From Macrostomum lignano (taxonomy: Eukaryota), in contig NIVC01000571.1 of NCBI GenBank assembly GCA_002269645.1, positions 248,001 through 312,000 of the forward strand: a DNA stretch of 64,000 nt, read 5' to 3'. This document shows, in pieces, positions 4,797-58,559 of the stretch. The notes under the pieces are model-generated. The model searched no databases. It was not told the DNA's origin and saw only the letters and a list, made by a program, of their open reading frames with translations. Within the stretch, counting starts at the first letter, position 1, and each line of letters begins with the position of its first letter. The position numbers were made by a program, and so were the translations under genes.

Positions 4797-13937
<9,141 letters not shown>

Positions 13938-28783: not shown

Positions 28784-31700
28784 ATGGAGGAAGCCATTAG
28801 GAGAAGGGCGGCGATTCGGTCTGTTGTCACGAGAACCATTAATCGGGCGGAGAAGTGGCTCACGGCAGGAAGTTCTCAGGATGTCAAAAGTACGGCAGAA
28901 GCCGAAGCTTGTATCGATACGTTGAAGGAGAAATTGACGATGATGGAAGAGTTGGATCTGGAAATCCAGGAGCAGACGGAAAAGGAAAAACTTAGCCGTG
29001 AAGAAGAAGAAGCAGATGAATATGCATTCAGATGTCGGAAGTATCTTAAACTGCTAGAGAAGGTTTTATCCAATACGGCTCACGCGGTAGTGTCCACACC
29101 TCATGTCAAATTACCGAAACGACAGGTCCCCACCTTTGACGGTACGGTAACTTCATGGCAGACTTATTGGGACCAGTTCTCTTCATCTGTAGACTCAAAC
29201 GGTCAATTGTCCGACGTCGATAAGTTTAATTACCTCTTGGATTCGCTCTCAGAGTCGGCCAAGTCTTGCATTCGTGGATTGAGTGTTACCTCTGCTAATT
29301 ACAAAGTGGCCATCGAGCTTTTGCGTGAGCGCTTTGGAAAGACCGACTTGGTTGTTAGAAGCCTGATGAATCAGCTGTCAGATATCACCTTATCGGATGT
29401 GTCTTTAACAGGCTTGCACTCGTTTCATGATGATCTTGCGGCTGCCGTGCGGAGTTTGGAGGTTCAGGGTGTACCTTCTTCGGCCTATGAGACGTTGCTG
29501 TTACCTAACTTGCTTCGCAAAATACCAGAAGACTTTCGTCTGGAACTGATGAAGTTAGCCAGCCTTTCAAAGACAAAGATTGACAGTATGGCAGTTCTGC
29601 TGGAGCTGTTACAGACGGAGGTCCAAATTCGCGAGAATGTTGCCGTTGGAGGAATCACGAAACCGAACAACTCTGACACCAGTCGTCCAATCCACCAGCC
29701 GAAGTCTTCAGTTGCAACCCTGGCAGTGCAGTCGCATCTTGGTCGGAAGGGAAACGCGAAAGTTTTCTGTACGTATTGTGGCTCAGACCACGTCTCCGAG
29801 TCGTGCAACAGATTGGCTTCAGTGACGGCTCGAATCGAATTCTTAAAGAAAGAACAACGGTGTTTTCGCTGTCTAAGGACCGGTCATTCCGCCAGGAGCT
29901 GCGGAGACACACGTCGATGCCGAAATTGTCACGGCCATCATCATGTCAGTGTCTGCTATAGTGGGCAGACAAATGGACCAGGTTCAGGCAATGACAAGAT
30001 GAAAGCACAACACGGTGAGACGACAGCCAGAAGCGGCACGGGTGGTGGCAATGTCCCGGATAAGGTGCGATTCGATTCAAAAAAGAAGGAGTTCAAGCCG
30101 AAGCTGCAGACGGGAAGCACGAACACCGCACAGAGTGAGCCGGCGTCGATAGCTTCAACCGAAGGCAATTTAGCGCTCTCGATGTTCATCAGTCGCAATC
30201 CAGCCATCGCTCTCCCGGTTGCAAAGGCTATCCTGCTTAGTCCGGATGGAAGGCGTGAGCTTCTCGTTCGGGTCCTGATGGACACAGCAAGCAATCGTTC
30301 GTATATTCGAGAGGACGTGTGTGACTTGCTCCAGTTTGAACGCTCATCTGAAGAGAGCTTAAGGGTTGCAGCATTTTCTGGCATTGCCACGACGATGGAT
30401 TCTTCGAGGGTAAGGTTTAGTCTCCGCAAGATTGATTCCTTTGAACTCATCAAGCTGGAAGCCAACGTAGTGAAGCAAATCTGTCAGCCTCATGGCTCAA
30501 TCATCATCGACTCGTTCGGTCACCTTCGTGATTTGGATCTGGCGGATCCATATGATCCACGAGATGTCAACACTCCGATCTCGATCCTTGTTGGCTCAGA
30601 CCAATATTTTGAAATTGTAGGCGACAGTGTGATTCGCGGCAATGCCGGACCAGCCGCCATTTCTTCGAAGCTACGGTTTCTTCTGTGTGGTCCACTGGCT
30701 GCTGCCGAGTCAGTGAAAGATCAACAGACCGTTTCCGCCGATCAAGTTGAATGTAGCGCTGCCCAGACCTTGTGCTGTAGTGCTCCCGTAGACGACCTCT
30801 CTTCTTTTTGGCGGCTTGAAGCATTGGGAATCTGTGAACGTCAGGAAGACGCTGCAGAAAGTTCCTTTAACTGTCACCCGGAGCTAGAGAACGGTAGATA
30901 TACCGTAAAATTGCCGTGGAAATATCCAGAAGGCTCCGTGCCGTTGAGAGACCACTTTGATATGGCGTATAAGAGACTGAGTACCACACTCCGTGCACTG
31001 CGAAAGGAACCTGAGACTCTAATGAAGTACAGTGAAATCATCTCAGAACAGGAAGCATCTGGCATAATTGAAAAAGTGCCTGAGGAGGATTTAGGCAATA
31101 AGAACTGCCACTATCTACCCCATCACCACGTCACCAAGGCCGACAGTGAGTTCACACGGTTACGCATTGTCTTTGATGGATCGGCCAAAAGTCGGGGTGG
31201 AGACGTCTCTATTAATAATCTACTTCACGTCGGTCCAACTGATGTTCCGCTGATACCAGAAATTCTGATGCGGTTCCGTATCAATCCTATTGCTGTCACA
31301 GGTGACATCGAGAAGGCCTTTCTGCAGATAGCCATTGAAACTCAGGACAGAGATTACTTACGATTTTTGTGGACTCTCCCGAGCGAGCCAAACAACGTTT
31401 TTCACTACCGATTCTGTCGGTTACCGTTCGGTCTCACGTGCTCTCCTGGTATCTTGCGAGCTACGGTAGTTCAACACCTTGATTTTCACCAGCAGACCTT
31501 TCCAACGACCGTCAATGTCATTCGCCGAGACTTATACGTCGACAATTTAGTTACTAGCTGTAAATCTCTAACGGAAGCCCTCCAGCTGTACCAGGATACT
31601 AAAGTGATATTCAAGTCCGCAGGCATGAATATGCGACAGTGGAAGTCCAATTCGGATTCGTTTAATAGGTCGGTGCCCGGTCAGGATGTCGGTCACGCTG

Positions 31701-35596: not shown

Positions 35597-37569
<1,973 letters not shown>

Positions 37570-37885
37570 ACTCTGCGAAAGCATTCACCCCCATTGGCGG
37601 GAGGTAGGGAGGCATGGAACCTCAGTGAGAAATGGTTTCCTCAAAGATTTTATCCGAGCACAATAGAAATGCCAGCCAGCCATTTGCTGAGACATCGCTG
37701 CCACCGTAATGATTTTCTGGGAGTTAATGGAGAAATGAATGTGACCGTTTTATTAGATCAGCAAAAGGGCCTGTCAACTTAAGCTTATAAAGTGGGGCCC
37801 GAACCTATGTAGCTCGTACACAAAAGATATGTCATTCGTCTCACAGTGACACCAGGAAGCTGGATTTGGCAAAAAGTTACAAAAA

Positions 37886-41840: not shown

Positions 41841-43484
41841 TCAAATTTCTGAGCCGGCCGTCCCGTCTTCATCAGCTTCATCGGCGGTGTCGGCAGGCGG
41901 TCGCCTCAGCGGCAGGCCGTCGGTGCTGTTGACGGCGGCGCCGGCAGCCGCAGCGGGGAGCCGCAGCAGCTGCAGGAAGGCGAGCTCCACCAGCTCGAAG
42001 GCCACGGTGAGGGTGACGCCCAGCGTGAGGCTGCCGACGCCGCCCAGCCGGCTGAGCAGGGCGCTCAGGGTGATGACCGGCTGCTCGCTGTGCTCCAGCG
42101 TCATGTAGGTCGCCCTGGCAACCGTCACCAAAGCCAAGTCGTCGGCTGGCAGGCCGACCTCGGCCTCTTCTTCCAGTTCGACGTAGTCGAGCGGACGCTG
42201 GCCTGTCCGCTGGCGCCGCAGCTGCGCCATCTGGGTGGCGCCGGGGCGCCAGCCGCAGTTTGACTGCTCAACCAAGTAGCGCCAGTGCACGCAGCGCCTG
42301 CGGCATGGTTGGCCCAGCTGCCCGCTAGCTTCATCCTCGCCGTCAGAGCCGGAGCGCTGCTCGCTGTACACTCGGTCCAGGCTGATGTTTCTGGCACAGG
42401 CGGTCCTGGCGAGGAGGCCGTCGGGACCTTCAAGATCTAGCCGGCTGCAGTAGGGCAGCAGCTGCAGGTCCAGCGGGCGGGGACTGATGTGGAAGGCGGA
42501 GGTGCAGTTGCAGTGGTGCGCGATAAAGCTGCTGATGCTCTGGGCGATGCAGGCATCGTAGGTGTAGTTGAAGACGGTCTCGCCGGCCTGGCTGATGCGG
42601 GGCGCGGCGGGCAGCTCGGTGGCCTCGATGCAGTCGGTCTTGGGACTGCGGTACTTGATGAAGCGCTCGGGCCGGTAGCGGATGGTGCTGGCGGTGCCCG
42701 GCTGCACATTGTACTGCTCGTAGTCGATGTTGGGGAAGGTGCCGGGCTCGTGCAGCACGATGGCCAGCCCCACGGCCTCGTGGAATAGGTTGTAGGCCTG
42801 CTGCGGGCCGAGATCCGCCGACGGGCTGGCGTTGAAGCCGCCGGCCGCCATCACCATGGAGACGCTGCTGACGTAGGCAGGGTCCTCGCTGACCTGCAGC
42901 TCGTAGCAGTTGAAGTAGAGCGGGTGCAGGATGCGGCGGACGCGGAAGCGGCACTCCTCCTCGTGCGCCACGGACGGGTTGGTGTTGCGGCTGTGGCGCA
43001 TCACGCAGAGCAGCAGCAGGTCGCCGAACCGGTGGCCGAGCTGGCGGACCTCGGTCGGCCGCAGGTTCTGGAAGTAAGAGGACACTCGGTCGTTCTGGAA
43101 CAGATCGGCTGCGTCCGCGGCGCGCCCGCTGGCAGCGAGGCTGTCGACGGCGTCGCGCAGCCGGCGGGAGAAGTCGATCGGGCTGGGGACGCGGCCGCTG
43201 GCCCAGAGCTGCGCGGCGCGGGGCGAGAAGGGCTGGTGGGAGCAGACAGTGATGCTGGGGAACAGAGACGGGTCGTTGGCCAGCTGGTCCGTCTGCAGGC
43301 TGACGTGGTACTCGAAGTACTCGCTGACCAGATAGTAGGAGTTGACGCCGAGTAGGCAGAGCATGCTGAGCACGAAGCCGGCCCACAGCAGCCTCAGGAA
43401 GGGGTGCTGGTCCGGCCGCACCAGCCGGCCAAAGCCGCGGAGGCTGGTGCCGCTGGCAAACTGGCGCAGGCAGCTGGTTGCCAT
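41841..43484 (-). CDS. DEG/ENaC/ASIC-family ion channel subunit, intronless, 547 aa
   Basis: FASGTSLRG + TM1 (LLWAGFVL..LGVNSYYLVSEYFEY), FPSITVC, YFNCY, GLAIVLHEPG, Cys-rich thumb (C..NCTS..C), TM2 LLSRLGGVGSLTLGVTL..FELVE. Confidence 0.9.
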   Translation of the reverse strand: MATSCLRQFASGTSLRGFGRLVRPDQHPFLRLLWAGFVLSMLCLLGVNSYYLVSEYFEYHVSLQTDQLANDPSLFPSITVCSHQPFSPRAAQLWASGRVPSPIDFSRRLRDAVDSLAASGRAADAADLFQNDRVSSYFQNLRPTEVRQLGHRFGDLLLLCVMRHSRNTNPSVAHEEECRFRVRRILHPLYFNCYELQVSEDPAYVSSVSMVMAAGGFNASPSADLGPQQAYNLFHEAVGLAIVLHEPGTFPNIDYEQYNVQPGTASTIRYRPERFIKYRSPKTDCIEATELPAAPRISQAGETVFNYTYDACIAQSISSFIAHHCNCTSAFHISPRPLDLQLLPYCSRLDLEGPDGLLARTACARNISLDRVYSEQRSGSDGEDEASGQLGQPCRRRCVHWRYLVEQSNCGWRPGATQMAQLRRQRTGQRPLDYVELEEEAEVGLPADDLALVTVARATYMTLEHSEQPVITLSALLSRLGGVGSLTLGVTLTVAFELVELAFLQLLRLPAAAAGAAVNSTDGLPLRRPPADTADEADEDGTAGSEI

Positions 43485-43861: not shown

Positions 43862-44330
43862 GGGTCAGTGAGGGACTGGGTCAGTGAGGGACTGGGTCAG
43901 TGAGGGACTGGGTCAGCGAGGGAATGGGTCAGTGAAGGAATGGGTCAGTGAGGGGATGGGTCAGTGAGGAGCTGGGTCAGTCAGGGAATGGGTCAGTGAG
44001 GGACTGGGTCAGTCAGGGACTGGGTTAGTGAGAGAATGGGTCAGTGAGGGACTGGGTCGTCAGTGAGGGGATGGGTCAGTGAGGGAATGGGTCAGTGAGG
44101 GGATGGGTCAGTGAAGGAATGGGTCAGTGAGGGGATGGGTCAGTGAGGGGATGGGTCAGTGAGGGAATGGGTCAGTGAGGGGATGGGTCAGTGAGGGGAT
44201 GGGTCGGTGAGGGAATGGGTCAGTGAGGGAATGGGTCAGTGAGGGAATGAGTCAGTGTGGGACTGGGTCAGTGAGAGAATGGGTCAGTGAGGGACTAAGT
44301 CAGTGAGGGACTGAGTCGTCAGTGAGGGGG
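43862..44330. repeat. ~15-bp GGGTCAGTGAGGGA(A/C)T tandem repeat
   Basis: ~30 variant copies. Confidence 0.92.
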
Positions 44331-44567
44331 TGAGGCACTGAGGGAATTGGTAAGTAGGGGATTAATTGCTAACAGACAACTCAGAATCCACAGCAAAAGT
44401 TGGTCAATCACCAAGTTCACCATATGTACCCCGTTGAAGCGCAACAAGCAAAAATTGGAATTTTAAAGTTTCCAATCAGAACTTCATCATCCGCTGACTT
44501 TGCCAATCAGAGTAATTTTGCCCCGCGGATAACGAACTGCGCACAGCCGGCCACCACGGACAGATCA

Positions 44568-45027
44568 AACAGACGGACAGATCAAACAGACGGACAGATC
44601 AAACAGGCGGACAGATCAAACAGACGGACAGATCAACCAGACGGACAGATCAAACAGGCGGACAGATCAAACAGGCGGACAGATCAAACAGGCGGACAGA
44701 TCAAACAGACGGACAGATCAAACAGACGGACATATCAAACAGACGGACATATCAAACAGACGGACAGATCAAACAGACGGACAGATCAAACAGACGGACA
44801 GATCAAACAGGCGGACAGATCAAACAGACGGACAGATCAAACAGACGGACAGATCAAACAGGCGGACAGATCAACCAGACGGACAGATCAAACAGGCGGA
44901 CAGATCAAACAGGCGGACAGATCAAACAGACGGACAGATCAAACAGGCGGACAGATCAACCAGACGGACAGATCAAACAGACGGACAGATCAAACAGATG
45001 GACAGATCAAACAGACGGACAGATCAA
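44568..45027. repeat. 17-bp GGACAGATCAAACAG(A/G)C tandem repeat
   Basis: ~27 copies. Confidence 0.92.
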
Positions 45028-45267
45028 AACGCCGACACAGTTTATCCATCAGGTCCGCAGCCACTGGTTAAACAGGCTGACCATGCCCCGCTGCTCAGTA
45101 TGCTTGTGTCGTTAAGGAAAAGGGTAAATAATTGTTGGATTTGATGCATCAACTACTGAGGAACTCCGGCTTATCAGTAGTCAGTTGCATAATAATTTGG
45201 CGATAGCTGGTTAATAATATCAGCTTCTTGATAAGTGATTTGAAAATTCAACACAAAATAAACCATT

Positions 45268-45530
45268 ACTGACCCACCGCTGACCCAATTTCTCCTACTG
45301 ACCCACCGCTGACCCAATTTCTCCTACTGACCCACCGCTGACCAATTTCTCTACTGACCCACTGCTGACCCAATCTCCTACTGACCCACTGCTGATCCAA
45401 TTTCTCCTACTGACCCACAGCTGACCAATTTCTCCTACTGACCCACTGCTGACCCAATCTCCTACTGACCCTACTGCTGATCCAATTTCTCCTACTGACC
45501 CACAGCTGACCAATTTCTCCTACTGACCCA
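45268..45530. repeat. ACTGACCCACCGCTGACCCAATTTCTCCT tandem repeat
   Basis: ~9 variant copies. Confidence 0.88.
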
Positions 45531-46044
45531 CCAATGTCTTCCTGCTGAGCTCAAAGCAAAGGAAGCAAGCCAGAGGAGCCGGTGGCAGTTTGCGGTGCCG
45601 ATGGCCAGAATCGCAAATGAAGCAGAGGAGTATTGATAATTCATTGAGGCCTGACAGATCAGCTCAGGCCGAGCCTACAGGCCCAGAAAACTGATCGCGT
45701 AATGGAAATCAGAACAATATCGAACACGGAGCATCGCATTTGTGACTCATCTGGAATCGAATCGAAAAAGATAAAAACTGTGGCTAGCAACGGCGAGAAC
45801 TGCTAACCGACAGGGCGCATCGGATTGGTAATGGAGGCAGGAGTAAAGTGCCATCAGGCGACAAAGACCTATAAACTCGTCCTTGTATTGTAGGATTACC
45901 GTATAAAGCCGGGGAATCACAGAGACACGCGTGGAATTCGCAAATATGCGAATCCAATTTGTTGAAGAGCAATGCTGCATTTTGGCATTGAAGAGGCAAA
46001 TTTCAGAGCAAAAGTTATAAAAGAGCTGTAAGTAGTTAGGGGAA

Positions 46045-48275
46045 AAGGGGCTGTGAGTCATGATGGGAAGGGAGCTGTGAGTCATGATGGGAAGGGAGCT
46101 GTGAGTCATGATGGGAAGGGAGCTGTGAGTCATGATGGGAAGGGAGCTGTGAGTCATGATGGGAAGGGAGCTGTGAGTCATGATGGGAAGGGAGCTGTGA
46201 GTCATGATGGGAAGGGAGCTGTGAGTCATGATGGGAAGGGAGCTGTGAGTCATGATGGGAAGGGAGCTGTGAGTCATGTTGGGAAGGGAGCTGTGAGTCA
46301 TGATGGGAAGGGAGCTGTGAGTCATGATGGGAAGGGAGCTGTGAGTCATGATGGGAAGGGAGCTGTGAGTCATGATGGGAAGGGAGCTGTGAGTCATGTT
46401 GGGAAGGGAGCTGTGAGTCATGATGGGAAGGGAGCTGTGAGTCATGATGGGAAGGGAGCTGTGAATTATTATGGGAAGGGAGCTGTGAGTCATGCTCGGA
46501 TAAGAGCTGTGAGTCATGATGGGAAGGGAGCTGTGAATTATTATGGGAAGGGAGCTGTGAGTCATGATGGGAAGGGAGCTGTGAGTCATGATGGGAAGGG
46601 AGCTGAGTCATGATGGGAAGGGAGCTGTGAGTCATGATGGGAAGGGAGCTGTGAGTCATGATGGGAAGGGAGCTGTGAGTCATGATGGGAAGGGAGCTGT
46701 GAGTCATGATGGGAAGGGAGCTGTGAGTCATGATGGGAAGGGAGCTGTGAATTATTATGGGAAGGGAGCTGTGAGTCATGATGGGAAGGGAGCTGTGAGT
46801 CATGATGGGAAGGGAGCTGTGAGTCATGATGGGAAGGGAGCTGTGAGTCATGATGGGAAGGGAGCTGTGAGTCATGATGGGAAGGGAGCTGTGAGTCATG
46901 ATGGGAAGGGAGCTGTGAGTCATGATGGGAAGGGAGCTGTGAGTCATGATGGGAAGGGAGCTGTGAATTATTATGGGAAGGGAGCTGTGAGTCATGATGG
47001 GAAGGGAGCTGAGTCATGATGGGAAGGGAGCTGTGAGTCATGATGGGAAGGGAGCTGTGAGTCATGATGGGAAGGGAGCTGTGAGTCATGATGGGAAGGG
47101 AGCTGTGAGTCATGATGGGAAGGGAGCTGTGAATTATTATGGGAAGGGAGCTGTGAGTCATGCTCGGATAAGAGCTGTGAGTCATGATGGGAAGGGAGCT
47201 GTGAGTCATGATGGGAAGGGAGCTGTGAGTCATGATGGGAAGGGAGCTGTGAGTCATGATGGGAAGGGAGCTGTGAGTCATGATGGGAAGGGAGCTGTGA
47301 GTCATGTTGGGAAGGGAGCTGTGAGTCATGATGGGAAGGGAGCTGTGAGTCATGATGGGAAGGGAGCTGTGAATTATTATGGGAAGGGAGCTGTGAGTCA
47401 TGCTCGGATAAGAGCTGTGAGTCATGATGGGAAGGGAGCTGTGAGTCATGATGGGAAGGGAGCTGTGAGTCATGATGGGAAGGGAGCTGTGAGTCATGTT
47501 GGGAAGGGAGCTGTGAATTATTATGGGAAGGGAGCTGTGAGTCATGGTCGGATAAGAGCTGTGAGTCATGATGGGAAGGGAGCTGTGAGTCATGATGGGA
47601 AGGGAGCTGTGAGTCATGATGGGAAGGGAGCTGTGAGTCATGATGGGAAGGGAGCTGTGAATTATTATGGGAAGGGAGCTGTGAGTCATGATGGGAAGGG
47701 AGCTGAGTCATGATGGGAAGGGAGCTGTGAGTCATGATGGGAAGGGAGCTGTGAGTCATGATGGGAAGGGAGCTGTGAGTCATGTTGGGAAGGGAGCTGT
47801 GAATTATTATGGGAAGGGAGCTGTGAGTCATGATGGGAAGGGAGCTGAGTCATGATGGGAAGGGAGCTGTGAGTCATGATGGGAAGGGAGCTGTGAGTCA
47901 TGATGGGAAGGGAGCTGTGAGTCATGTTGGGAAGGGAGCTGTGAATTATTATGGGAAGGGAGCTGTGAGTCATGATGGGAAGGGAGCTGAGTCATGATGG
48001 GAAGGGAGCTGTGAGTCATGATGGGAAGGGAGCTGTGAGTCATGATGGGAAGGGAGCTGTGAGTCATGTTGGGAAGGGAGCTGTGAATTATTATGGGAAG
48101 GGAGCTGTGAGTCATGATGGGAAGGGAGCTGAGTCATGATGGGAAGGGAGCTGTGAGTCATGATGGGAAGGGAGCTGTGAGTCATGATGGGAAGGGAGCT
48201 GTGAGTCATGTTGGGAAGGGAGCTGTGAATTATTATGGGAAGGGAGCTGTGAGTCATGATGGGAAGGGAGCTGTG
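46045..48275. repeat. 24-bp satellite GTGAGTCATGATGGGAAGGGAGCT (~90 units, estimated)
   Basis: Homogeneous units with recurring variants (GTGAATTATT, CATGTTGG, 22-bp deletion form) that recur in higher-order blocks. Confidence 0.97.
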
Positions 48276-48696
48276 AATCGACATGATTGGCGGGTAGCTG
48301 AGTCATATTGGATCATGTCATAGGTCATCGGTCATATTAGATTATACGTCATACTTAGCAGCAGATGGAAATGCTGGAAATCAGAGAGCATCTTCCAAGA
48401 GATAATAAAAGTGTCAGGTCAGGTGCAAGAACTTTCAATTTCAGAATTAATGAGAAAAATAAAAGTAAAATTCAACCCAGTGGAGCAATTACTGGGGTAA
48501 AAATTAGATGCACATATATTAAGAAAAATTTTAAAAATCTAATAACCCACACAGATAAACCTCTGTGATGGTTTTCAACCACGAAAAAAAATTGCCTAAA
48601 ATTATGCCATTTATAATTTCTTCAGGTCAAGCACGCTCAAGATTTTCTTCAGCCTAGTTTTGGATTCCTTTGCTCACTTTTATTCTGCCCATCTTA

Positions 48697-49345
48697 GGTG
48701 TTACAGGGGTCTATGATCAGTCAGGTGTTACAGGGGTCCATGGCCAGTCAGGTGTTACAGGGGTCCATGGCCAGTCAGGTGTTACAGAGGTCCATGGCCA
48801 GTCAGGTGTTACATGGGTCCATGGCCAGTCAGGTGTTACAGGGGTCCATGGCTAGTCAGGTGTTACATGGGTCCATGGCCAGTCAGGTGTTACATGGGTC
48901 CATGGCCAGTCAGGTGTTACAGGAGTCTATGGCAAGTCAGGTGTTACAGGGGTCCATGGCCAGTCAGGTGTTACAGGAGTCTATGGCAAGTCAGGTGTTA
49001 CAGGGGTCCATGGCCAGTCAGGTGTTACAGAGGTCCATGGCCAGTCAGGTGTTACAGGGGTCTTTGGCCAGTCAGGTGTTACATGGGTCCATGGCTAGTC
49101 AGGTGTTACAGGGGTCTTTGGCCAGTCCGGGCGACAGGGGTCCATGGCCAGTCAGGTGTTACATGGGTCCATGGCCAGTCAGGTGTTACAGGGGTCCATG
49201 GCCAGTCAGGTGTTACATGGGTCCATGGCCAGTCAGGTGTTACAGGGGTCCATGGCTAGTCAGGTGTTACAGGGGTCCATGGCCAGTCAGGTGTTACAGG
49301 GGTCCATGGCCAGTCAGGTGTTACAGGGATCCACGCAAGTCAGAT
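48697..49345. repeat. 27-bp tandem repeat GTCAGGTGTTACAGGGGTCCATGGCCA
   Basis: ~23 copies immediately 3' of the decarboxylase stop. Confidence 0.93.
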
Positions 49346-49406
49346 GTTACAGAAGTCCACGGCAAGTCAAGGACTGCAGTGGTCCATGTAGCAATGCAGC
49401 GGCCGG

Positions 49407-52400
49407 TTACTCGAACAGGCCGCGGGACGGGATGTTCGCGAACTCCTGGTCGGTGAGCACCCGGACGCCGTACTCGCCGTCGCAGTCAGCCAGGCCGTGG
49501 ATCTCCAATGCCTTGGGGCCCTTGGTCAGGCGGGCCAGGTAGGTGACAATGGCCAGGTTGATGACCTGTCCGGGCACCACCACTGGGATGCCGGGCGGGT
49601 AGGAGACGATCTGGTCGCAGCAGACGCGGTCAAGCAGTGCCTGGTTTGGGCGGCCGTCGTCATCCAGCAGTAGGAGCCGCTCGCCGCTCTCGTAGAAGGC
49701 AAGGCGGGGCAGGCAGGCGAGGCGGCTGAAGCGGGGGATCTCCGTGATGCGGTAGTAGCTGCGGGGCGGCCGCCGGTCCTTGGCCAGCCGGAGCATCGCG
49801 TCGAACAGGCGGGACACCTGGCGGGGTAGGGAATGGGATGCGGGATTTTTGGGGTGGGATCGGAGACCGGATTGTATAAGTGGGATGGGGAATGCCGGAT
49901 GGGGAAGGAAGGATGCTGAATAGAGAATGCTGGATGGGGAGTGTTGGATGGGGAATGCGGGATGGGGAATGTCAGATGGGGAATGTCGGATGGGAAATGC
50001 TGGATGGGGGATGGATGCTGGATAGGGAATGCTGGATGGGGAATGCTGGATGGGGAATGCGGGATGGGGAATGCTGGATGGGGAATGCGGGATGGGAAAT
50101 GTCGGATGGGGAATGTCGGATGGGAAATGCTGGATGGGGGATGGATGCTGGATAGGGAATGCTGGATGGGGAATGCTGGATGGGGAATGCGGGATGGGGA
50201 ATGCGGGATGGGGAATGCGGGATGGGGAATGCGGGATGGAGAATGCCGGATGGGGAATGCTGGATGGGGAATGCTGGATGGGGAATGCTGGATGGGGAAT
50301 GCGGGATGGGGAATGCGGGATGGGGAATGCGGGATGGAGAATGCCGGATGGGGAATGTCGGATGGGAAATGCTGGATGGGGGATGGATGCTGGATAGGGA
50401 ATGCTGGATGGGGAATGCTGGATGGGGAATGCTGGATGGGGAATGCGGGATGGGGAATGCGGGATGGGGAATGCTGGATGGGGAATGCGGGATGGGGAAT
50501 GCGGGATGGGGAATGCCGGATGGGGAATGGCGGACGAGGAATGTGGGGTAAAAAAAGATGGGATGGGGAATGGGTGAGTCAACGGCAGAGCCAACGAGAG
50601 CATAGATGAGCGAGCGAACCTTGCTGCCGGTGGTGCCCATGCTGAGCAGCAGGGTGATGGTATTGAAAGTCCGCTTCTCGCCTTGGATGTTGAACCTCTC
50701 GAACAGGATCTGCTGCAGCTCCTGCGCGCTGTAGCCGGACTTGGAGATGTCCACAGTGAGCTTGGTGGGGTCCAGGCGGATGCCATCCTGCTGCAGCTCC
50801 TCGGGCAGCAGGTCCTCCAGCTCCAGCACGCGGAACACCCCCGTGGAGTTGATCTTCTGGCGGAGCTCACCGGACAGCTTCACCGTGCGGTCCAGCAGCC
50901 GGTAGCCCTCCATCACTGCCTGTGGGTGCGATTAATGGCTGAGAATCTGTGAGGCAGGGTGACTGGAGATTCACGAGAAAAAACGATCTCTGAACGAGGA
51001 GACAGGTACAAATACAGCTCGGGGATAAATGGGGTCAGACAGGCAGAAGCGCACCTGTTTCCTGCCCACATCCAGGCTGGCAATGAGGCCGTACTGCGGA
51101 CTGGTGCTGGCGTACATGTTGAAGTTCTCCCTGAACAGGTGCTCATCAAAGGCCGGGTCGTTAACGTGAACCATGCTGGCCTGGGAGAAGGCGGTGAGGG
51201 TCTTGTGACTGCTCTGGGTCACGTAGTCCGCGCCGGCCTCGAGAGCGGTGGGCCGGAAGGCCGGGTGGAAGCGGGCGAAGGCGTACCAGGCCTCATCAAT
51301 GATTACCTTGATGCCCGCGCTGCGGTGGGGAAGAGGTTGTTCTGTGAGCATCAGGAGCAGCCAAAGAGCCCCCAGGATCGAAGCCTTAAAATCTCACCCC
51401 TAGAGTCGAAGCTTCAAAAACTCATCTGCTAGGATGAAAACCTCAAAATCCCACCCCAGTGACTGAAGTTCAAAATCTCACCCCAGTGATTGGAGTTCAA
51501 AATCTCACCCCAGTGACTGAAGTTCAAAATCTCACCCCAGTGATTGAAGTTCAAAATCTCACCCCAGTGACTGAAGTTCAAAATCTCACCCCAGTGACTG
51601 AAGTTCAAAATCTTACCCCAGTGACTGAAGTTCAAAATCTCAAACCCCAGTGATTGAAGTTCAAAATCACACCCCAGTGATTGAAGTTCAAAATCCCACC
51701 CCAGTGACTGAAGTTCAAAATCTCACCCCAGTGATTGAAGTTCAAAATCTCACCCCAGTGACTGAAGTTCAAAATCTCACCCCAGTGATTGAAGTTCAAA
51801 ATCTCACCCCAGTGACTGAAGTTCAAAATCTCACCCCAGTGACTGAAGTTCAAAATCTCACCCCTCCCCTATGGTCGCGACCTAAATTTGAGACCGAGGA
51901 CAGGCACAATGACCCCCACCTGTGCGCCGCCTCCACAATGGGCTTGAGGTCGTAGAGCAGGCCATCGTAGGTGCAGTTGGTCAGGATGATGGCCTTGGCG
52001 TCGGGATTGGCCTTGATGGCCTCATAGATGGCCCGCTTGGGCACGGGGCCGAAGATGCCGAACTGCGGCCTGGCGGAGCAGTCCATGTACACCGGGCGGC
52101 AGTCGGACAGGATCACGCCGTAGTGCACAGACTTGTGGCAGTTGCGGTCCAGCAGCAGCTTGTCGCCGGGGGCCAGCAGGGTCTGGAAGATCACCTTGTT
52201 GGTGGTGGAGGCTCCGTTGGTGGCAAAGTAGGTCTTGCGGGCGCCGAAGGCCTTGGCAGCCAGAGACTGGGCGGCCGCGATGACGCCCTTGGGGTGCATG
52301 AGGGAGTCGAGCATGGGCACGGACACGGACAGGTCGGCCCGCAGCATGTGCTCGCCCACAAAGTCGTAGAAGTCGCCAACCCAGGGCGAGTTGCGCAGCG

Positions 52401-54602
52401 AGTCACCGCCCGAGTGGCCGGGCGTGTGCCAGGAGTCCTTGGCCATCTTCACGTACGTCTTCAGCGCGTCGTAGAACGGCGTGGCGGACTTTTCGGCCAG
52501 CTCGGCGGACAAGATGCGAAACCAGCCGCTGTAGTCGGACTCGTCCCGGTTGAAGTAGCCGTCAACGGCGTGGCTGACCAGCTCCTCCAGCAGGGCGCGC
52601 TCGTCGTCCCCGCCGCTCAGCACAACGTAGAGCGACAACTCCGGCCGGAGCTCGTTCAGCCGGTTCGCCAGCGTGATGGCCGCCTGGTTCACCTCCGCGG
52701 AGGTCAGGTGCCTAGGTGGGGTGGGGTGGGTGGTGTCAGGTGCCTGGATTAGGTAGGTGGGTGATGTCAGGTGTCTGGATTAGGTGGGTGGGTGATGTCA
52801 GGTGCCTGGATTAGGTGGGTGGGTGATGTCAGGTGCCTGGATTAGGTGGGTGGGTGATGTCAGGTGTCTGGATTAGGTGGGTGGGTGATGTCAGGTGCCT
52901 GGATTGGGTGAGTGGGTGATGTCAGGTGTCTGGATTAGGCGGGTGGGTGATATCAGGTGCCTGGATTAGGTGGGTGGGTGATGTCAGGTGCCTGGATTAG
53001 GTGGGTGGGTGATGTCAGGTGCCTGGATTAGGTGGGTGGGTGATGTCAGGTGCCTGGATTAGGTGGGTGGGTGATGTTAGGTGCCTGGATTAGGTGGGTG
53101 GGTGATGTCAGGTGCCTGGATTAGGTGGGTGGGTGATGTCAGGTGCCCAGCCGAAGTGAAGGAGGACGAGTTAATTGTCCCCATTTAAGACTATAAAGTT
53201 AAACAGATATATGAACGGGAGCAGGCGAATGTGTTGATGGGCCTGCGGCAAGATGCATCAGTTATAAATGCAGTTTTATCGCCTACTTATAGGCAAGCTT
53301 TAACAGCCTCGGGTGTTTCCCAGCCTCATCAACTGACTAAGCCAGGGTCCGCAGCATGGCAGCAAAATGATTTTGGCTTCCATTAAAATCTGGCAAGCAG
53401 ATCCAGTAATTTTTCGCCATCAGTTTGGACTGGCACAAACGGAAACCGAAATCACACAGGCTGCAGCTGATGGGTTCCAGGTGACGGTAAATGCGTAAAA
53501 CTGGCATCATCAGCTCAGGGCGATTGATGAAGCAAGCAAGCTAAACGATTTTAAAAGATAGGACCCTCTAGGACACCCTGACGACCTTCTATGAGACCCT
53601 GACAACCGTCTAGAAACCCTGACGACCCTCTTTGAGACCCTGACGGTCCTCTAGAAACCCTGACGACACTTTCTGAGACCCTGACGACACTCTATGACAC
53701 CCTGACGACACTCTATGACACCCTGACGACACTCTATGACACCCTGACGACACTCTATGAGACCCTGATGATCGTCTAGAAACCCTGACGACACCTTATG
53801 ACACCCTGACGACCCTCTATGACACCCTGACGACCCTCGTATGAGACCCTGATGACCCTCTAGAAACCCTGACGACACTTTATGAGACCCTGACGACCCT
53901 CTATGAGACCCTGACGACACTCTATGAAACCCTGACGACCCTCTATGAGACCCTGACGACACTTTATGAGACCCTGACGACACTATGAGACCCTGACGAC
54001 ACTATGAGACCCTGATGATCGTCTAGAAACCCTGACGACACCTTATGACACCCTGACGACCCTCGTATGAGACCCTGACGACCCTCTATGAGACCCTGAC
54101 GATACTCTATGAGACCCTGACGACACTATGAGACCCTGACGACACTATGAGACCCTGACGATCCTCTAGAAACCCTGACGACACTCTGAGATCCTGACGA
54201 CACTCTATGAGATCCCGACGACATACTAAGAGCCCGACGGCCCACTAGAAGCCTCGACGTCAGTAAAACGCCAAAAGATTCAGGAATGGTTTCTGTTATC
54301 TTTTTGTATTTTACCAAAGTGATTCATGCCGACATGTAGCGTAGAAAGAATAACAAAGCAAAGAAATTCACTGCATACAGCGCCTCCGCTAGCACAGACC
54401 TGTCGATGACGACAATCTGGACTTCACCATCGGCCGAGACGCAGTCTATGGCCTCCTTGAAGGCGCTCACCGCGGCGAACGCCATGCCGAACGGATTGTC
54501 CAGGCGGGCGCCCGCCAACTTCAGGCCGGCCAGGGCGGCTCCCAGCCAGGCGGAGTCGCAGCTGACTAGGAGGATGCGGCTGACCGGAGGCGGGGTGGAC
54601 AT
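49407..54602 (-). CDS. Bacterial-type PLP-dependent Orn/Lys/Arg decarboxylase (AAT fold) with receiver-like N-terminal domain; join(54602..54400,52711..51920,51319..51055,50919..50620,49817..49407) = 1971 nt, 656 aa
   Basis: Four GT-AG introns with matching phases (2,2,0,0). Motifs WHTPGHSGG, DLSVS..LDSL, FATNGASTTNK, DRNCHKSVH, TYDG, DEAWYA, QSSHK (PLP Lys), STSPQY, DPTKLT, YPPGIPVVVPG. Confidence 0.92.
49880..50530. repeat. GGGGAATGC(T/G)GGAT satellite in decarboxylase intron 4
   Basis: ~14-15-bp variant units. Confidence 0.92.
51432..51862. repeat. 27-bp repeat CCCCAGTGA(C/T)TGAAGTTCAAAATCTCA in intron 2
   Basis: ~16 copies. Confidence 0.95.
52737..53147. repeat. 31-bp repeat GTCAGGTGCCTGGATTAGGTGGGTGGGTGAT in intron 1
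   Basis: ~13 copies; the unit resembles the adjacent acceptor/exon 2 start. Confidence 0.93.
53575..54235. repeat. ACCCTGACGACACTCTATGAG-type tandem repeat in intron 1
   Basis: ~20-21-bp variant units. Confidence 0.9.
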
Positions 54603-55119
54603 CGCTGGATGGCTAATCGGTGCTGCTGCGGCTGGCGAGGGCGGGCGACTCACGAGCGACTTTGGACTGAAAGAAAATCAGTTTTTTTCCGGACGGGTTT
54701 GTCATTCTTAACGGCGACGCGATTTACATTGCCCCTGTGCTTGCGTCCCTTGAACTCAATGGATCAAGGGAGCCTTGGCCATAGACAGCTGCGTGCGTTG
54801 CGCAGATACGAGCGTACTTTAACAACACATTCAGCAGTTTGGCAACCGAAATAGAAGGAAAAAAATGAGGAAAGTTTCGAGAAAAAAAACATAGATATAA
54901 AGATTTTCCGGGATATTGTTTGCGTTCTCCGGGATATTATTTAGTATTATTCAATAATATCCCGTAAAATCCTTATGTGCATGTCTTATGTAAATGCGAT
55001 TAAGCATGCCTTTTCGGGAGCTATTTTCACAAATCCCTCGGGCCTTTCTCGAGCTCACTCAGAAGCCATGTTTAATCTTCTACATATTCCTCACTCTCTC
55101 CCGATAAGCGATCGCCCTG

Positions 55120-55508: not shown

Positions 55509-55924
55509 GGTCATTTAGGCAAGCTTTTGCTGTTCGGTAGTTGGGTAAAGTCGCAATGTCTATGGCCAGAGCTCGCTTACCCCATCGAGGTTCAGAGAGG
55601 CAACTAAGGAAGTAATTACGTTTTTCAAATACTACTCAGAAAAAGTAGGCAGATAGAGATATCCTGCAGTGCAAAGCCTAGCAAACCTATGACAAGCGGA
55701 ACAAATTGGGAAAGAAAGAAAAAGGAGCCATTTATCAACTTCATTAATAAACAATTGGAATAACTGGAAGCCTTCGCGGACAGTTCAGTGTATTTATCGA
55801 ACTTCTCATTTGAAGAGCGTCTAAAAAAGTTTTTTTTTCATAAAAACGGTACAAAAAAGGTCAATAAACCATAAACGACAGCTGTAACAGTATCAGTATA
55901 AAGTGAGAAAAGCACTCATGTACA

Positions 55925-56690
55925 CAGGTGGAATGTAGAAAGCTGCAGATTCACTCATGCACACAGGTGGAATTTAGAGGGTTGCAGACTCACTCATGCA
56001 CACAGGTGGAATTTAGAGGGTTGCAGACTCACTCATGCACACAGGTGGAATTTAGAGGGCTGCAGACTCACTCATGCACACAGGTGGAATTTAGAGGGCT
56101 GCAGACTCACTCATGCACACAGGTGGAATTTAGAGGGCTGCAGACTCACTCATGCACACAGGTGGAATTTAGAGGGCTGCAGACTCACTCATGCACACAG
56201 GTGGAATTTAGAGGGCTGCAGACTCACTCATGCACACAGGTGGAATTTAGAGGGCTGCAGACTCACTCATGCACACAGGTGGAATTTAGAGGGCTGCAGA
56301 CTCACTCATGCACACAGGTGGAATTTAGAGGGCTGCAGACTCACTCATGCACACAGGTGGAATTTAGAGGGCTGCAGACTCACTCATGCACACAGGTGGA
56401 ATTTAGAGGGCTGCAGACTCACTCATGCACACAGGTGGAATTTAGAGGGCTGCAGACTCACTCATGCACACAGGTGGAATTTAGAGGGCTGCAGACTCAC
56501 TCATGCACACAGGTGGAATTTAGAGGGCTGCAGACTCACTCATGCACACAGGTGGAATTTAGAGGGCTGCAGACTCACTCATGCACACAGGTGGAATTTA
56601 GAGGGCTGCAGACTCACTCATGCACACAGGTGGAATTTAGAGGGCTGCAGACTCACTCATGCACACAGGTGGAATGTAGAGAGCCGCAGA
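55925..56690. repeat. 39-bp tandem repeat CACAGGTGGAATTTAGAGGGCTGCAGACTCACTCATGCA, ~19 copies
   Basis: Almost invariant head-to-tail units, no spacers. Confidence 0.97.
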
Positions 56691-58559
56691 CTCCTGTAGA
56701 AAAAGATAATAATAATTACAGGGCACTTATGATATAACAAAAATGAAAAATATAAAATTTAACAAAGCCAAAAATTTATAGCAAGCATCACAGATTCTGT
56801 GCACGCTTGCAAAAACACGCTGCCTCAAAAAGACAGGCGCAAAGGGCAAAAGTACATACTCATATCGACTGTATAAAAAATTACTCAATATAATTTTGGC
56901 AAGGTGAGTGAAAGATTAACGATAGGACTTGAATGAAAATGTGCTGTTGAGTATAATGTAAATAAGCCAGTGCGAAATACTCATGTTGCCCTAACAGACC
57001 TGTGTACTGCTATTGGGCATATAACGTGATAGTATAAAATGGCTACAAATATATATATATAAAAAACAGATGTAAACAAGCCAATTCAATATGAGTCAAA
57101 AGGCGCTCGCATTTGTCTTGAGCAGCTCAAGCCTAAAATGCAAAAGTGATGGGAGGAGCGTAAAATCAATTTCAGTTGCATTGACGCATCGATAGGTCAA
57201 GTGGGTGCGGCGCGTTGGGGAGCTTTAGCGGGTTAAGGTCAAGATTTAGGAATTGAGGGCCACTTGATGAGGAATTGGGGTGCTGTGATGGGGAATTCAA
57301 GGGGTGCTGTGATGGGGAATTTGGGATGCTGTGATGAAGAATTGGGGTGCTGGGAATTGGCTCACATAGGCGTTTCAGCATGTTTGTGGAGTACAAGACA
57401 GTCTAGGCCTACAGACGATGGTCTGCAAGTCTGCAATGCTATTCGGCAGGTGAGGAATAGCGGGAGTTCTGGAAGGCAGACAACCCTCACGCTCCGCAGG
57501 ATGTTCAAGGTATACCCCAGGCTGCTGGACAGACCGAGCCCCGACGCTGGCAAACCATCCAGTGGCTCCGGCCAAATTCGCGTTGCGGCTTGCCCGCAGG
57601 CTACGGAGTGCAAGTGAAGCGCTGGTGGACCTTTCGTTTGGCCTCTGATTTTTCCGAGCCGCCTCTTAGCCGAGGAGTTTCTTGGTTGCTAGCCGTCGGG
57701 ACGGTAACGGCTTAAGCCACCCCCTACGCTATTCTCCTGGCTGGCTGTTGGGCTTGGGCTTGGGCTGGCCTATGGAGTATCCAAAAACATCCACCGCGTC
57801 CCTTGATGCTGCTGGAATTCCAACTGAGGTTGGTACCGCAGCTTAACTGGACAATTGGAGCACTGGAACTTTCTGTGCCTCTTACTCTAACAACCCTGTC
57901 GCCACCGAAGTGGCTGGACAACAGTGCAGCGGACCCCATATCTCAAAGAAGGCCCGTAGCATCGCCCGATTTGAATTCCGCCGGCACAAAGCTGAAGAAT
58001 GGAGAGCGGAAGCCGCCTCATCTTTCGCCTATGAGGAGGATACCAGAAGCTCTGCGAATACTGCGAAGGAGCCGACATCCAACAAAGGGACGGACTCCGC
58101 GCGTCGACCAGAAGCGTCGGGCGCCGACAAAGCTTTTGGTGCGGCTTGCTCCTCCCGCGGCGGGACCTCTACTCGTTAGGAAACTCCCACGGTTTCGAAC
58201 GCCTGCGGGCCCGGATTCAAGACTGCTGTGGAGGGATCCGAAGCGGCGGATGCTGACCAAACCACAAGCTGAAGTGCACCTATGCGACATTTAAGAGGAA
58301 GTCGGCTCTGATCATTTGAGGCCAGAAGACGCACCTTTCGGCCGAACAGCTCGACCAAAATCTGCCCCAGGTTGGACTCCCACCTGGTCCAGATGGCTTC
58401 AACTCCTGAAAACAAGCGTCTAGGACCAGGCCCTCCACACCCAACCCGCCATCACTAACGGTGACGGTCTACGCCGTCTGCCTTGGCAGCTAATCCGGAC
58501 TTGCTGGCAAATGGCGCAGTGGTTCATGAGACCGCAAGCCAGGCGGAGACTAGTTCACG

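What the first reader, a model, noticed from the sequence alone, without database searches (positions are those of the whole stretch)
49407..54602. Intron-containing bacterial-type Orn/Lys/Arg decarboxylase in an animal
Seen: a complete 656-aa spliced ORF with an intact PLP motif (QSSHK) and an N-terminal receiver-like domain (IVVID...LYVV...VDGYF). Established: animal ornithine decarboxylase is an alanine-racemase-fold enzyme, while this AAT-fold family (LdcI/AdiA/SpeF relatives) is essentially prokaryotic. Inference: a domesticated horizontal transfer giving a new route to agmatine, cadaverine or putrescine, or to acid resistance.
Basis: partly seen in the sequence, partly recalled or inferred. 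Interest (0 to 1): 0.72.

Follow-up and report, generated by a model that had tools for sequence, protein, structure and literature searches.

The report
Bacterial amino-acid decarboxylase gene in flatworm
A flatworm-like animal carries an intact, intron-split copy of a decarboxylase gene taken from freshwater Chromobacterium-type bacteria; its relative Macrostomum lignano has it too, with every intron in a different place, so it is a clear gene transfer into animals and a case of recent intron gain.

Summary
On the minus strand, 54602-49407, five exons joined by four GT-AG introns encode a 656-aa protein with OKR_DC_1 (E 1.9e-101), an S-H-K PLP site and a predicted CheY-like N-terminal domain.

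The window is animal DNA: it holds an ENaC-type channel gene whose only database relative is from Macrostomum lignano, plus retrotransposons.

The protein is 72-77% identical over its full length to 652-aa enzymes of Chromobacteriaceae. In a neighbour-joining tree it pairs with the M. lignano protein (100% bootstrap), and that pair sits inside the bacterial family. Vertical descent and contamination are excluded.

The gene looks functional. It keeps 236 of 250 bacterially invariant residues, and dN/dS against the M. lignano copy is 0.27.

The four introns here and the three in M. lignano occupy seven different positions, so they arose after transfer, separately in each lineage.

The substrate is unproven. 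The active-site motifs are of the basic-amino-acid type, not the Rv2531c glutamate type. The bacterial gene sits beside argF and argG, which favours ornithine. Acid resistance is unlikely.

I found no published report. A second bacterial-type gene (HypX-like) lies 36 kb away.

The parts
54400..54602 (-). Exon 1 (ATG at 54602-54600; codons 1-68, ends in phase 2). Encodes beta1-beta3 of the receiver-like domain, including IVVID (D67).
52712..54399 (-). Intron 1, 1688 nt, GT..AG. Holds a 21-nt minisatellite (53562-54223) and a 31-nt minisatellite (52703-53147). Most units of the 31-nt array repeat the acceptor CAG plus the first 9 nt of exon 2.
51920..52711 (-). Exon 2 (792 nt). Encodes the rest of the receiver-like domain, the linker and the first half of the PLP domain (HTPGHSGG, NGASTT, DRNCHKS).
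51320..51919 (-). Intron 2, 600 nt, GT..AG, inside codon 332 (phase 2). Contains a 27-nt minisatellite at 51443-51864.
51055..51319 (-). Exon 3 (265 nt). Encodes IIDEAW (D340) and the PLP-lysine motif QSSHK (K371), AFSQAS and NMYASTSP.
50920..51054 (-). Intron 3, 135 nt, GT..AG, phase 0 between Q421 and A422. No tandem repeat.
50620..50919 (-). Exon 4 (300 nt), the specificity/linker region (residues 422-521).
49818..50619 (-). Intron 4, 802 nt, GT..AG, phase 0 between K521 and V522. Its 14-nt minisatellite (49913-50529) has a C-rich strand that runs on into the polypyrimidine tract of the acceptor.
49407..49817 (-). Exon 5 (411 nt with the TAA stop at 49409-49407). Encodes the OKR_DC_1_C region with the YPPGIPVVVPGQ motif.
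48696..49369 (.). 27-nt minisatellite (25 copies) starting 38 nt downstream of the stop codon, in the 3' flank or UTR.
54603..54700 (-). 5' flank. It has an in-frame stop 26 codons upstream and a TTTTCTTTCAG motif 66 nt upstream of the ATG. The motif could be a cis- or trans-splice acceptor; this is inference only.

Best explanation
This is a PLP-dependent, fold-type-I ('winged') amino-acid decarboxylase gene. An ancestor of this animal and of Macrostomum lignano acquired it once, as an intronless gene, from a Chromobacteriaceae-type betaproteobacterium. It has since been kept as a working nuclear gene. After the two flatworm lineages split, each gained its own spliceosomal introns: four here and three in M. 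lignano, with no position shared. All four introns here follow an exonic AG. Most of the introns then filled with minisatellites.

Shown:
- bacterial ancestry;
- physical linkage to animal genes;
- intact catalytic motifs;
- purifying selection;
- intron positions that differ between the two species.

Inferred:
- The enzyme decarboxylates a basic amino acid in the cytosol, most probably ornithine to putrescine. About 45% for ornithine specifically and about 80% for some basic amino acid.
- This would give a route to diamines outside the animal's own alanine-racemase-fold ODC/antizyme control.
For: - Gene model: 656 aa, five exons, four GT-AG introns.
- Family: OKR_DC_1 at 340 bits and OKR_DC_1_C at 26.2 bits. 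The predicted structure matches full-length LdcI, LdcC, AdiA, LdcA, ODC and Rv2531c with TMq about 0.6.
- Donor: 72-77% identity over 97-100% of the length to 652-aa proteins of Chromobacterium, Aquitalea, Gulbenkiania and Vogesella.
- Tree: a neighbour-joining tree of 77 taxa and 648 columns gives window + M. lignano 100%. Their sister is P0002/P0003 (100%), nested among Chromobacteriaceae. P0002/P0003 lie on genuine bacterial contigs with DnaB, flagellin and SodB.
- Single origin: 11 residue states are shared only by the two flatworm proteins. Four of them (G271D, R320L, S374T, H401Y) are at sites invariant in 118 bacteria. Control pairs share 0-2 such states.
- Constraint: 236 of 250 bacterially invariant columns are kept. 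Substitutions against P0003 affect 6% of invariant sites and 54% of the most variable quartile. dN/dS is 0.27 against M. lignano; a bacterial pair gives 0.23.
- Host context: the ENaC-type gene hits only M. lignano, and retroelements share the contig.
- M. lignano carries three copies. Their introns lie after K334, after Q488 and in codon 575, and none matches the window's positions.
- Substrate type: HTPGHSGG and AFSQAS match LdcI and LdcA. The Rv2531c glutamate-binding R576, R718 and N731 are S, a gap and E here (PMC13506015).
- Bacterial context: argF follows the gene in 38 of 82 loci, and argG follows in all 21 Chromobacteriaceae-type loci.
Against: - No transcript or activity data could be obtained.
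- The enzyme belongs to no characterised orthologue group. NCBIfam scores are 189-241 bits against cut-offs of 794-1310. Its best PDB match by sequence is the glutamate decarboxylase Rv2531c. The substrate assignment is therefore weak.
- Several substitutions hit bacterially invariant residues close to the cofactor: T235A in the NGTST loop, T369S next to the PLP lysine, and H401Y three residues before the conserved TSP threonine. They could alter or reduce activity.
- No flanking synteny with the M. lignano locus was found within +/-10 kb, and no intron position is shared. A single insertion event is therefore supported by the protein tree and shared substitutions only.
- Synonymous divergence is saturated, so it says nothing about timing.
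Confidence: 0.85

Rival explanations
1. There were two independent transfers. This animal and M. lignano each acquired the gene separately from closely related, unsampled Chromobacteriaceae donors, for example bacteria living with macrostomid worms.
For: No intron position is shared between the two genes. No flanking synteny was detected. The protein distance window-M. lignano (0.278) is about the same as window-P0003 (0.282). Synonymous distances are also equal.
Against: The two flatworm proteins are monophyletic in 100 of 100 bootstraps, with an internal branch of 0.04-0.06. They share 11 exclusive states, four of them at sites invariant in 118 bacteria spanning the Betaproteobacteria. Those states would then have to be donor features or convergences. 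One event in a common ancestor is more parsimonious.
Confidence: 0.1
2. The gene was transferred and is still intact, but its substrate is not a basic amino acid. It could be glutamate, as for Rv2531c, or another amino acid, so it has nothing to do with polyamines.
For: The best PDB sequence match is Rv2531c (271 bits, against 235 for LdcA). That enzyme was shown to be a glutamate decarboxylase, and its authors argue that the superfamily is functionally broader than annotated (PMC13506015). No member of the 652-aa betaproteobacterial subfamily was found characterised.
Against: The residues proposed to bind glutamate's gamma-carboxylate in Rv2531c (R576, R718, N731) are S377, a gap and E here. 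The TPGHxGG motif is of the KOR type, and there is no extra N-terminal DUF domain. The conserved argF/argG neighbourhood in bacteria points to the ornithine/arginine node.
Confidence: 0.15
3. It is a decaying relic: a transferred gene that is no longer functional or expressed.
For: The window copy differs at 14 bacterially invariant sites, some near the cofactor (T235A, T369S, H401Y). No expression data exist. No canonical poly(A) hexamer lies within 700 nt downstream.
Against: The 1971-nt reading frame is open across five exons with precise GT-AG junctions. 94% of invariant residues are retained, and substitutions are concentrated at variable sites. dN/dS is 0.27. Three intact copies are annotated in M. 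lignano.
Confidence: 0.05
4. It is bacterial contamination or an assembly chimera.
For: Identity to bacteria is high (about 75%) and GC3 is 0.91, similar to the bacterial homologue at 0.93.
Against: The coding sequence is interrupted four times by GT-AG introns that no bacterial copy has. It is flanked on both sides by animal genes and retroelements on one contig. A native single-exon ENaC gene has GC3 0.90, so composition is not diagnostic. An independently assembled M. lignano genome carries an intron-containing orthologue.
Confidence: 0.01

Closest known systems
652-aa 'aminotransferase class I/II-fold PLP-dependent enzyme / ornithine or arginine decarboxylase' of Chromobacteriaceae (Chromobacterium, Aquitalea, Gulbenkiania, Vogesella; closest are uncultured P0002/P0003)
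   Same: Full-length collinear alignment at 72-77% identity. Same three-domain layout of REC-like wing, PLP domain and C-terminal domain. Same length to within 4 residues. 236 of 250 invariant residues shared.
   Different: The animal copy has four spliceosomal introns, three extra N-terminal residues and 14 changes at bacterially invariant sites. It lacks the argF/argG operon context. The bacterial subfamily itself appears to be biochemically uncharacterised.
Macrostomum lignano Mlig029890g1-g3 (PAA72828.1, PAA72361.1, PAA62975.1; UniProt A0A1I8HZQ0), annotated only as hypothetical / OKR_DC_1 domain protein
   Same: Sister sequence (100% bootstrap) at 76% identity. It shares 11 exclusive substitutions. 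It is also intron-containing, and one of its introns is almost wholly a minisatellite.
   Different: It has three introns at entirely different positions. It carries a roughly 38-aa C-terminal extension. Its flanks differ, with an ankyrin-repeat gene upstream. No synteny was detected.
Enterobacterial winged AAT-fold decarboxylases LdcI/CadA, LdcC, AdiA, SpeC/SpeF and P. aeruginosa LdcA
   Same: Same fold and domain order, with Foldseek TMq about 0.6. Shared TPGHxGG, CHKS, DEAW, S-x-H-K and AFSQAS motifs.
   Different: Only 21-26% identity (Foldseek alignment). The protein is 55-100 residues shorter. NCBIfam scores fall far below every equivalog cut-off. There is no acid-stress antiporter partner. 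It is not a member of any of these orthologue groups.
Mycobacterium tuberculosis Rv2531c (PDB 9N0O), 'cloaked' glutamate decarboxylase
   Same: Best-scoring solved structure by sequence and by fold. The C-terminal half aligns better with it than with LdcI.
   Different: Rv2531c has an extra N-terminal domain (947 aa) and the glutamate-binding residues R576, R718 and N731. It has HALPVARG in place of HTPGHSGG. None of these features is present here (PMC13506015).

Membership tests
Fold-type-I (AAT-fold) Orn/Lys/Arg decarboxylase superfamily (Pfam OKR_DC_1 / IPR000310) | Major PLP domain matches OKR_DC_1 above the gathering threshold | tested here: met
   340.3 bits against a cut-off of 27; residues 145-518 cover profile positions 1-415 of 417
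Fold-type-I (AAT-fold) Orn/Lys/Arg decarboxylase superfamily (Pfam OKR_DC_1 / IPR000310) | Schiff-base lysine in the S-x-H-K motif, plus the cofactor-stacking His (CHKS) and the pyridine-N Asp (DEAW) | tested here: met
   S369-H370-K371, H260-K261 and D340 are present and invariant in the 39-sequence alignment. The roles of these residues are taken from homologous structures and from PMC13506015.
Fold-type-I (AAT-fold) Orn/Lys/Arg decarboxylase superfamily (Pfam OKR_DC_1 / IPR000310) | C-terminal OKR_DC_1_C domain | tested here: met
   26.2 bits against a cut-off of 24.2, so marginal. The YPPGIPVVVPGQ motif aligns to LdcA, LdcC and Rv2531c.
'Extended/winged' form with an N-terminal REC-like domain (PMC8503589) | CheY-like (beta-alpha)5 domain fused to the N-terminus | tested here: met
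   The AF2 model shows E8-13/H17-33/E40-45/H48-57/E61-67/H78-89/E94-99/H103-114/E119-122 with pLDDT 84-93. NCBIfam AdiA and LdcC alignments start at residues 44-52. Pfam OKR_DC_1_N gave no hit at E<=0.01.
Characterised orthologue groups LdcI/CadA, LdcC, AdiA, SpeC, SpeF | Score above the NCBIfam equivalog or subfamily cut-off | tested here: not met
   241, 218, 205, 193 and 189 bits against cut-offs of 968, 1056, 1167, 794 and 1310
Rv2531c-type glutamate decarboxylase subfamily | Extra N-terminal DUF domain and the glutamate-binding residues R576, R718 and N731 | tested here: not met
   The protein is 656 aa with no extra domain. The equivalent positions are S377, a gap and E (PMC13506015 section 9).
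Any Orn/Lys/Arg decarboxylase | Catalytic decarboxylation of a basic amino acid | not testable with these tools
   Needs an enzyme assay
Horizontally acquired, domesticated bacterial gene in an animal genome | Nested within a bacterial clade with strong support, not sister to eukaryotic homologues | tested here: met
   Neighbour-joining bootstrap is 100% for (window, M. lignano) and 100% for that pair plus P0002/P0003, inside Chromobacteriaceae
Horizontally acquired, domesticated bacterial gene in an animal genome | Physical linkage to host genes and eukaryotic gene structure (spliceosomal introns) | tested here: met
   Four GT-AG introns. ENaC, ankyrin and MTHFD genes and retroelements lie on the same 64-kb window.
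Horizontally acquired, domesticated bacterial gene in an animal genome | Purifying selection after transfer | tested here: met
   dN/dS is 0.27 against M. lignano. 94% of invariant sites are kept. Substitutions are skewed towards variable sites.
Horizontally acquired, domesticated bacterial gene in an animal genome | Transcription and splicing in the host | not testable with these tools
   No transcriptome was available. The MetaClust entry P0040 carries a frame-disturbing insertion at exactly M. lignano intron 2 (after Q488). That fits an incompletely spliced transcript or a gene model, but the source is unknown.

The most novel reading that the evidence does not exclude
The transferred enzyme gives macrostomid flatworms a bacterial-style diamine synthesis (putrescine, or cadaverine/agmatine) that is blind to antizyme. 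This would be a rewiring of polyamine control not known in other animals. Separately, the pair of orthologues records seven lineage-specific intron gains in a gene that began without introns. At least one of those introns grew by tandem duplication of its own acceptor-exon boundary. That would make the locus a rare dated natural experiment on how new introns and intronic minisatellites arise.
Probability: 0.35. Interest if true: 0.75.

Novelty: new member of a known kind. Interest (0 to 1): 0.62.

Why it matters
Transfers of bacterial genes into animals that are both well supported and functional are still few. This one is unusually clean. The donor family can be named, at about 75% identity. 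An orthologue exists in a laboratory model, M. lignano, which has RNAi and transgenesis. The gene encodes a metabolic enzyme of a fold that I did not find reported in animals (my own knowledge and the literature searches; not tested against animal genomes).

If it makes putrescine, cadaverine or agmatine, it bypasses the ODC/antizyme circuit that controls polyamines in animals.

The gene arrived without introns and now has four introns in one species and three in another, with none shared. It therefore gives direct, countable evidence of recent intron gain, and it links new introns to minisatellite expansion.

A second bacterial-type gene (HypX-like) in the same window suggests that this lineage may hold more such acquisitions.

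Tried and rejected
- Exact-sequence look-ups of the window's ENaC ORF and of UniProt P0001 found no record. The M. lignano locus was reached only through cluster member P0124.
- tblastx of the whole window against the 24-kb M. lignano locus found only the decarboxylase exons and low-complexity repeats. Synteny within +/-10 kb is therefore absent or untestable.
- Base composition and GC3 were rejected as a marker of foreign origin, because a native ENaC gene has GC3 0.90.
- dS was rejected as a clock. The window-M. lignano and window-bacterium values are equal, at about 0.64, and probably saturated.
- The Rfam scan of the window found nothing.
- No canonical poly(A) hexamer lies within 700 nt downstream.
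- The intron minisatellite units occur nowhere else in the window, so there is no sign of a shared introner-like element.
- NCBIfam has no model that names the HypX-like ORF. The large protein search was needed for that.
- Literature searches for this transfer, or for a characterised Chromobacteriaceae enzyme, returned nothing relevant.
- Assigning the substrate by homology was rejected, because the protein is roughly equidistant from all characterised groups.


Full report
**1. What is in the sequence**

The gene lies on the minus strand between 54602 and 49407. Six-frame translation shows five open stretches that belong together.
- With exact junctions, the exons are 54602-54400, 52711-51920, 51319-51055, 50919-50620 and 49817-49407.
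- The four intervening sequences are 1688, 600, 135 and 802 nt. All begin GT and end AG behind a C-rich tract.
- The joined CDS is 1971 nt and encodes 656 aa.
- Exon GC is 65% and GC3 is 0.91.
- Retaining introns 1-3 would give an in-frame stop within 27 codons. Retaining intron 4 would shift the frame.
- An in-frame stop lies 26 codons upstream of the ATG.
- Three of the four introns consist largely of minisatellites, with units of 31 and 21 nt, 27 nt, and 14 nt. Another array starts 38 nt after the stop codon.

**2. What the protein is**

- Pfam gives OKR_DC_1 at 340 bits, covering the whole 417-position profile, and OKR_DC_1_C just above its cut-off.
- An AlphaFold2 model built on 39 homologues has mean pLDDT 75 and pTM 0.71. 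Residues 8-122 form a five-fold beta-alpha CheY-like domain with pLDDT 84-93.
- Foldseek matches the whole chain to Rv2531c, LdcI, LdcC, AdiA, LdcF, LdcA and Lactobacillus ODC, with TMq about 0.6.

It is therefore an 'extended/winged' AAT-fold decarboxylase in the sense of PMC8503589.

It is not a member of any characterised orthologue group. NCBIfam scores of 189-241 bits fall far below the LdcC, CadA, AdiA, SpeC and SpeF cut-offs of 794-1310 bits.

**3. Whose genome it is**

The window is eukaryotic, and animal.
- It carries a single-exon ASC/ENaC channel gene (41841-43484, minus strand).
- It carries an intact BEL/Pao-type polyprotein ORF (28784-34120) and a LINE reverse transcriptase.
- It carries a DIRS-like element with reverse transcriptase and tyrosine recombinase.
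- It also holds an ankyrin-repeat gene and MTHFD exons.

The ENaC protein's only hit among 5.8 billion proteins is a Macrostomum lignano protein, at 38% identity. The host is thus a flatworm-like animal whose nearest sequenced relative in the database is M. lignano. It is not M. lignano itself.

**4. Where the gene came from**

- The best hits are the M. lignano protein A0A1I8HZQ0 (76% identity) and then dozens of 652-aa proteins from Chromobacterium, Aquitalea, Gulbenkiania, Vogesella and Pseudogulbenkiania. These are 71-77% identical over 97-100% of the length.
- A neighbour-joining tree (77 taxa, 648 columns, 100 bootstraps) groups the window with M. lignano at 100%. It places that pair as sister to P0002/P0003 at 100%, nested within Chromobacteriaceae.
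- P0002/P0003 lie on ordinary bacterial contigs with dnaB, flagellin, sodB, argF and argG.
- Their nearest named genomes are Chromobacterium aquaticum and C. haemolyticum (81%) and Aquitalea palustris (80%).

This topology rules out vertical inheritance. The introns and the animal flanks rule out contamination.

GC3 does not help. It is 0.91 here, 0.93 in the bacterial gene and 0.90 in the native ENaC gene.

**5. One transfer or two**

The two flatworm proteins share 11 states found in none of 118 bacterial sequences. Four of these are at otherwise invariant sites (G271D, R320L, S374T, H401Y). Control pairs share 0-2 such states. The internal branch uniting the two flatworm proteins is 0.04-0.06 substitutions per site, with tips of 0.13-0.15.

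Against a single event, no flanking synteny was seen within +/-10 kb and no intron is shared.

I rate a single ancestral transfer at about 0.85-0.9. Two transfers from the same unsampled donor lineage get about 0.1.

**6. Is it still a working gene**

- The window protein keeps 236 of the 250 columns that are invariant in 118 bacteria; M. lignano keeps 232.
- Differences from P0003 affect 6% of invariant columns but 54% of the most variable quartile.
- Nei-Gojobori dN/dS is 0.27 between the two flatworm genes, similar to 0.23 for a bacterial pair.
- M. lignano keeps three annotated copies.
- All cofactor residues identified from homologues are present: H260-K261, D340 and S-H-K371.

Some caution is needed. 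T235A, T369S and H401Y lie next to cofactor or active-site elements. Expression could not be checked.

**7. Introns**

The M. lignano gene (locus L083, NIVC01001059.1) has exons 10001-11002, 11176-11637, 12633-12892 and 13639-13993. Its GT-AG introns lie after K334 (phase 0), after Q488 (phase 0) and in codon 575 (phase 2).

The window's introns lie in codon 68 (phase 2), in codon 332 (phase 2), after Q421 and after K521. None coincides with an M. lignano intron. The nearest pair is 13 nt apart.

The bacterial ancestor had no introns and the protein alignment has no indel at any junction. All seven introns are therefore post-transfer gains that arose separately in each lineage.

All four window introns follow an exonic AG. 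Three are AG|G and one is AG|C.

In intron 1, most units of the 31-nt array read ...CCAG|GCACCTGAC, which is the acceptor plus the first 9 nt of exon 2; in two of the seven units printed the G after the AG is an A. The array therefore grew by tandem duplication across the intron-exon boundary.

M. lignano intron 3 is almost wholly a 20-nt array that reaches to within 7 nt of its acceptor.

**8. Function**

Homology cannot assign the substrate. Two lines of evidence favour a basic amino acid.

First, the best PDB hit, Rv2531c, was recently shown to be a glutamate decarboxylase that uses R576, R718 and N731 (PMC13506015). Here those positions are S377, a gap and E. The HTPGHSGG and AFSQAS motifs match LdcI and LdcA rather than Rv2531c (HALPVARG, ALRQAS).

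Second, in bacteria the gene is followed on the same strand by argF in 38 of 82 loci. It is followed by argG in all 21 Chromobacteriaceae-type loci, and no antiporter is among the genes called around it in the two annotated bacterial loci. This is a biosynthetic context at the ornithine/arginine node, not an acid-stress context.

I therefore favour a cytosolic ornithine decarboxylase that makes putrescine. I put about 45% on ornithine and about 80% on some basic amino acid. Acid resistance is unlikely.

M. lignano has antizyme (PMC1874602), and so presumably the canonical ODC circuit. A bacterial-fold enzyme would escape that circuit. This last step is inference.

**9. Comparison with what is known, and novelty**

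Bacteria-to-animal transfers of metabolic genes, followed by intron gain, are a known kind of event. AAT-fold decarboxylases are reported in eukaryotes only as short forms in green plants and Paulinella (PMC8503589) and as Rv2531c-type proteins in apicomplexans (PMC13506015).

The M. lignano proteins are in databases only as hypothetical or domain-named entries. Six literature searches found no description of this transfer.

I class it as a new member of a known kind. The identifiable donor, the orthologue in a tractable model animal and the seven unshared introns add value.

**10. Other things seen**

A HypX/HoxX-like gene lies on the same strand about 36 kb away. It has a formyltransferase exon at 12900-13937 and an enoyl-CoA-hydratase exon at 8506-8958. 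Its best 120 hits are all bacterial, at 40-48% identity. MTHFD/FolD-type exons follow it directly.

In the decarboxylase family, the REC-like domain keeps an invariant Asp at the end of beta3.

Noticed in passing
window 8506-13937 (minus strand): 12900-13937 and 8506-8958: A second bacterial-type gene with the HypX/HoxX architecture. Formyl_trans_N/C and ECH_1 domains lie in separate exons about 4 kb apart, with a Pro/Ala-rich minisatellite between them. The best 120 database hits are all bacterial 'hydrogenase maturation protein HypX/HoxX' at 40-48% identity, with E-values from 8e-72 to 1e-64. No eukaryote is among them. A CO-forming hydrogenase maturation factor in an animal is unexpected.
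   Followed up: partly
window 5031-8117 (minus strand): MTHFD/FolD-type exons (THF_DHG_CYH and THF_DHG_CYH_C) lie directly downstream of the HypX-like exons on the same strand. This enzyme makes 10-formyl-THF, the substrate of HypX. Whether the two are fused or merely adjacent was not worked out.
   Followed up: no
window 52703-53147 (intron 1 / exon 2 boundary): Most units of the 31-nt minisatellite contain CCAG|GCACCTGAC, a copy of the intron-1 acceptor plus the first 9 nt of exon 2; in two of the seven units printed the G after the AG is an A. The array arose by tandem duplication across the boundary and supplies about a dozen cryptic acceptor sites.
   Followed up: partly
L083 12916-13631 and 9068-9959 (M. 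lignano locus): Intron 3 of the M. lignano orthologue is almost entirely a 20-nt minisatellite. Two more arrays run up to about 40 nt before its ATG. Minisatellite-filled introns and flanks are common to both species.
   Followed up: partly
window-wide, e.g. 46045-48276, 44000-45531, 55913-56693, 5100-5700, 9100-10200, 35700-37600: Tandem repeats are extremely dense. Examples are a 24-mer in 93 copies, a 39-mer in 20 copies, and long (GA)n/(CT)n-like and Pro/Ser-coding arrays. They create many spurious long ORFs on both strands.
   Followed up: no
window 28784-34120 (+), 35664-37571 (-), 15178-17801 (+), 63-464 (+): Retroelements. There is an uninterrupted 1778-aa BEL/Pao-like gag-pol ORF. There are two LINE-type reverse-transcriptase fragments with near-identical C-termini. 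There is also a DIRS-like element with RT plus tyrosine recombinase.
   Followed up: no
window 41841-43484 (minus strand): A single-exon ASC/ENaC channel gene with GC3 0.90. Its only database relative is an M. lignano protein at 38% identity. This shows that very high GC3 is native to some genes of this genome.
   Followed up: partly
decarboxylase residues 8-122 (exons 1-2): In the REC-like domain, the Asp at the end of beta3 (D67, the position of the phospho-acceptor in true receivers) is invariant across the 39 aligned family members. D16 after beta1 is nearly invariant. The usual beta5 lysine is absent. Whether this wing is a regulated receiver is unknown.
   Followed up: no
L001 / L002 (Logan runs DRR199168, ERR10767065): The closest bacterial sequences to the flatworm genes come from an unnamed Chromobacteriaceae lineage. 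It is at most 81% identical to any species-representative genome. The sample sources could not be looked up, and they might reveal the donor's habitat.
   Followed up: no
P0040 (MetaClust UPI0007A2439E): A 1129-aa entry joins an ankyrin-repeat protein to the M. lignano decarboxylase. It carries a frame-disturbing insertion of about 120 residues exactly at M. lignano intron 2 (after Q488). This looks like a read-through or intron-retaining transcript or gene model of the adjacent ankyrin gene and the decarboxylase.
   Followed up: partly
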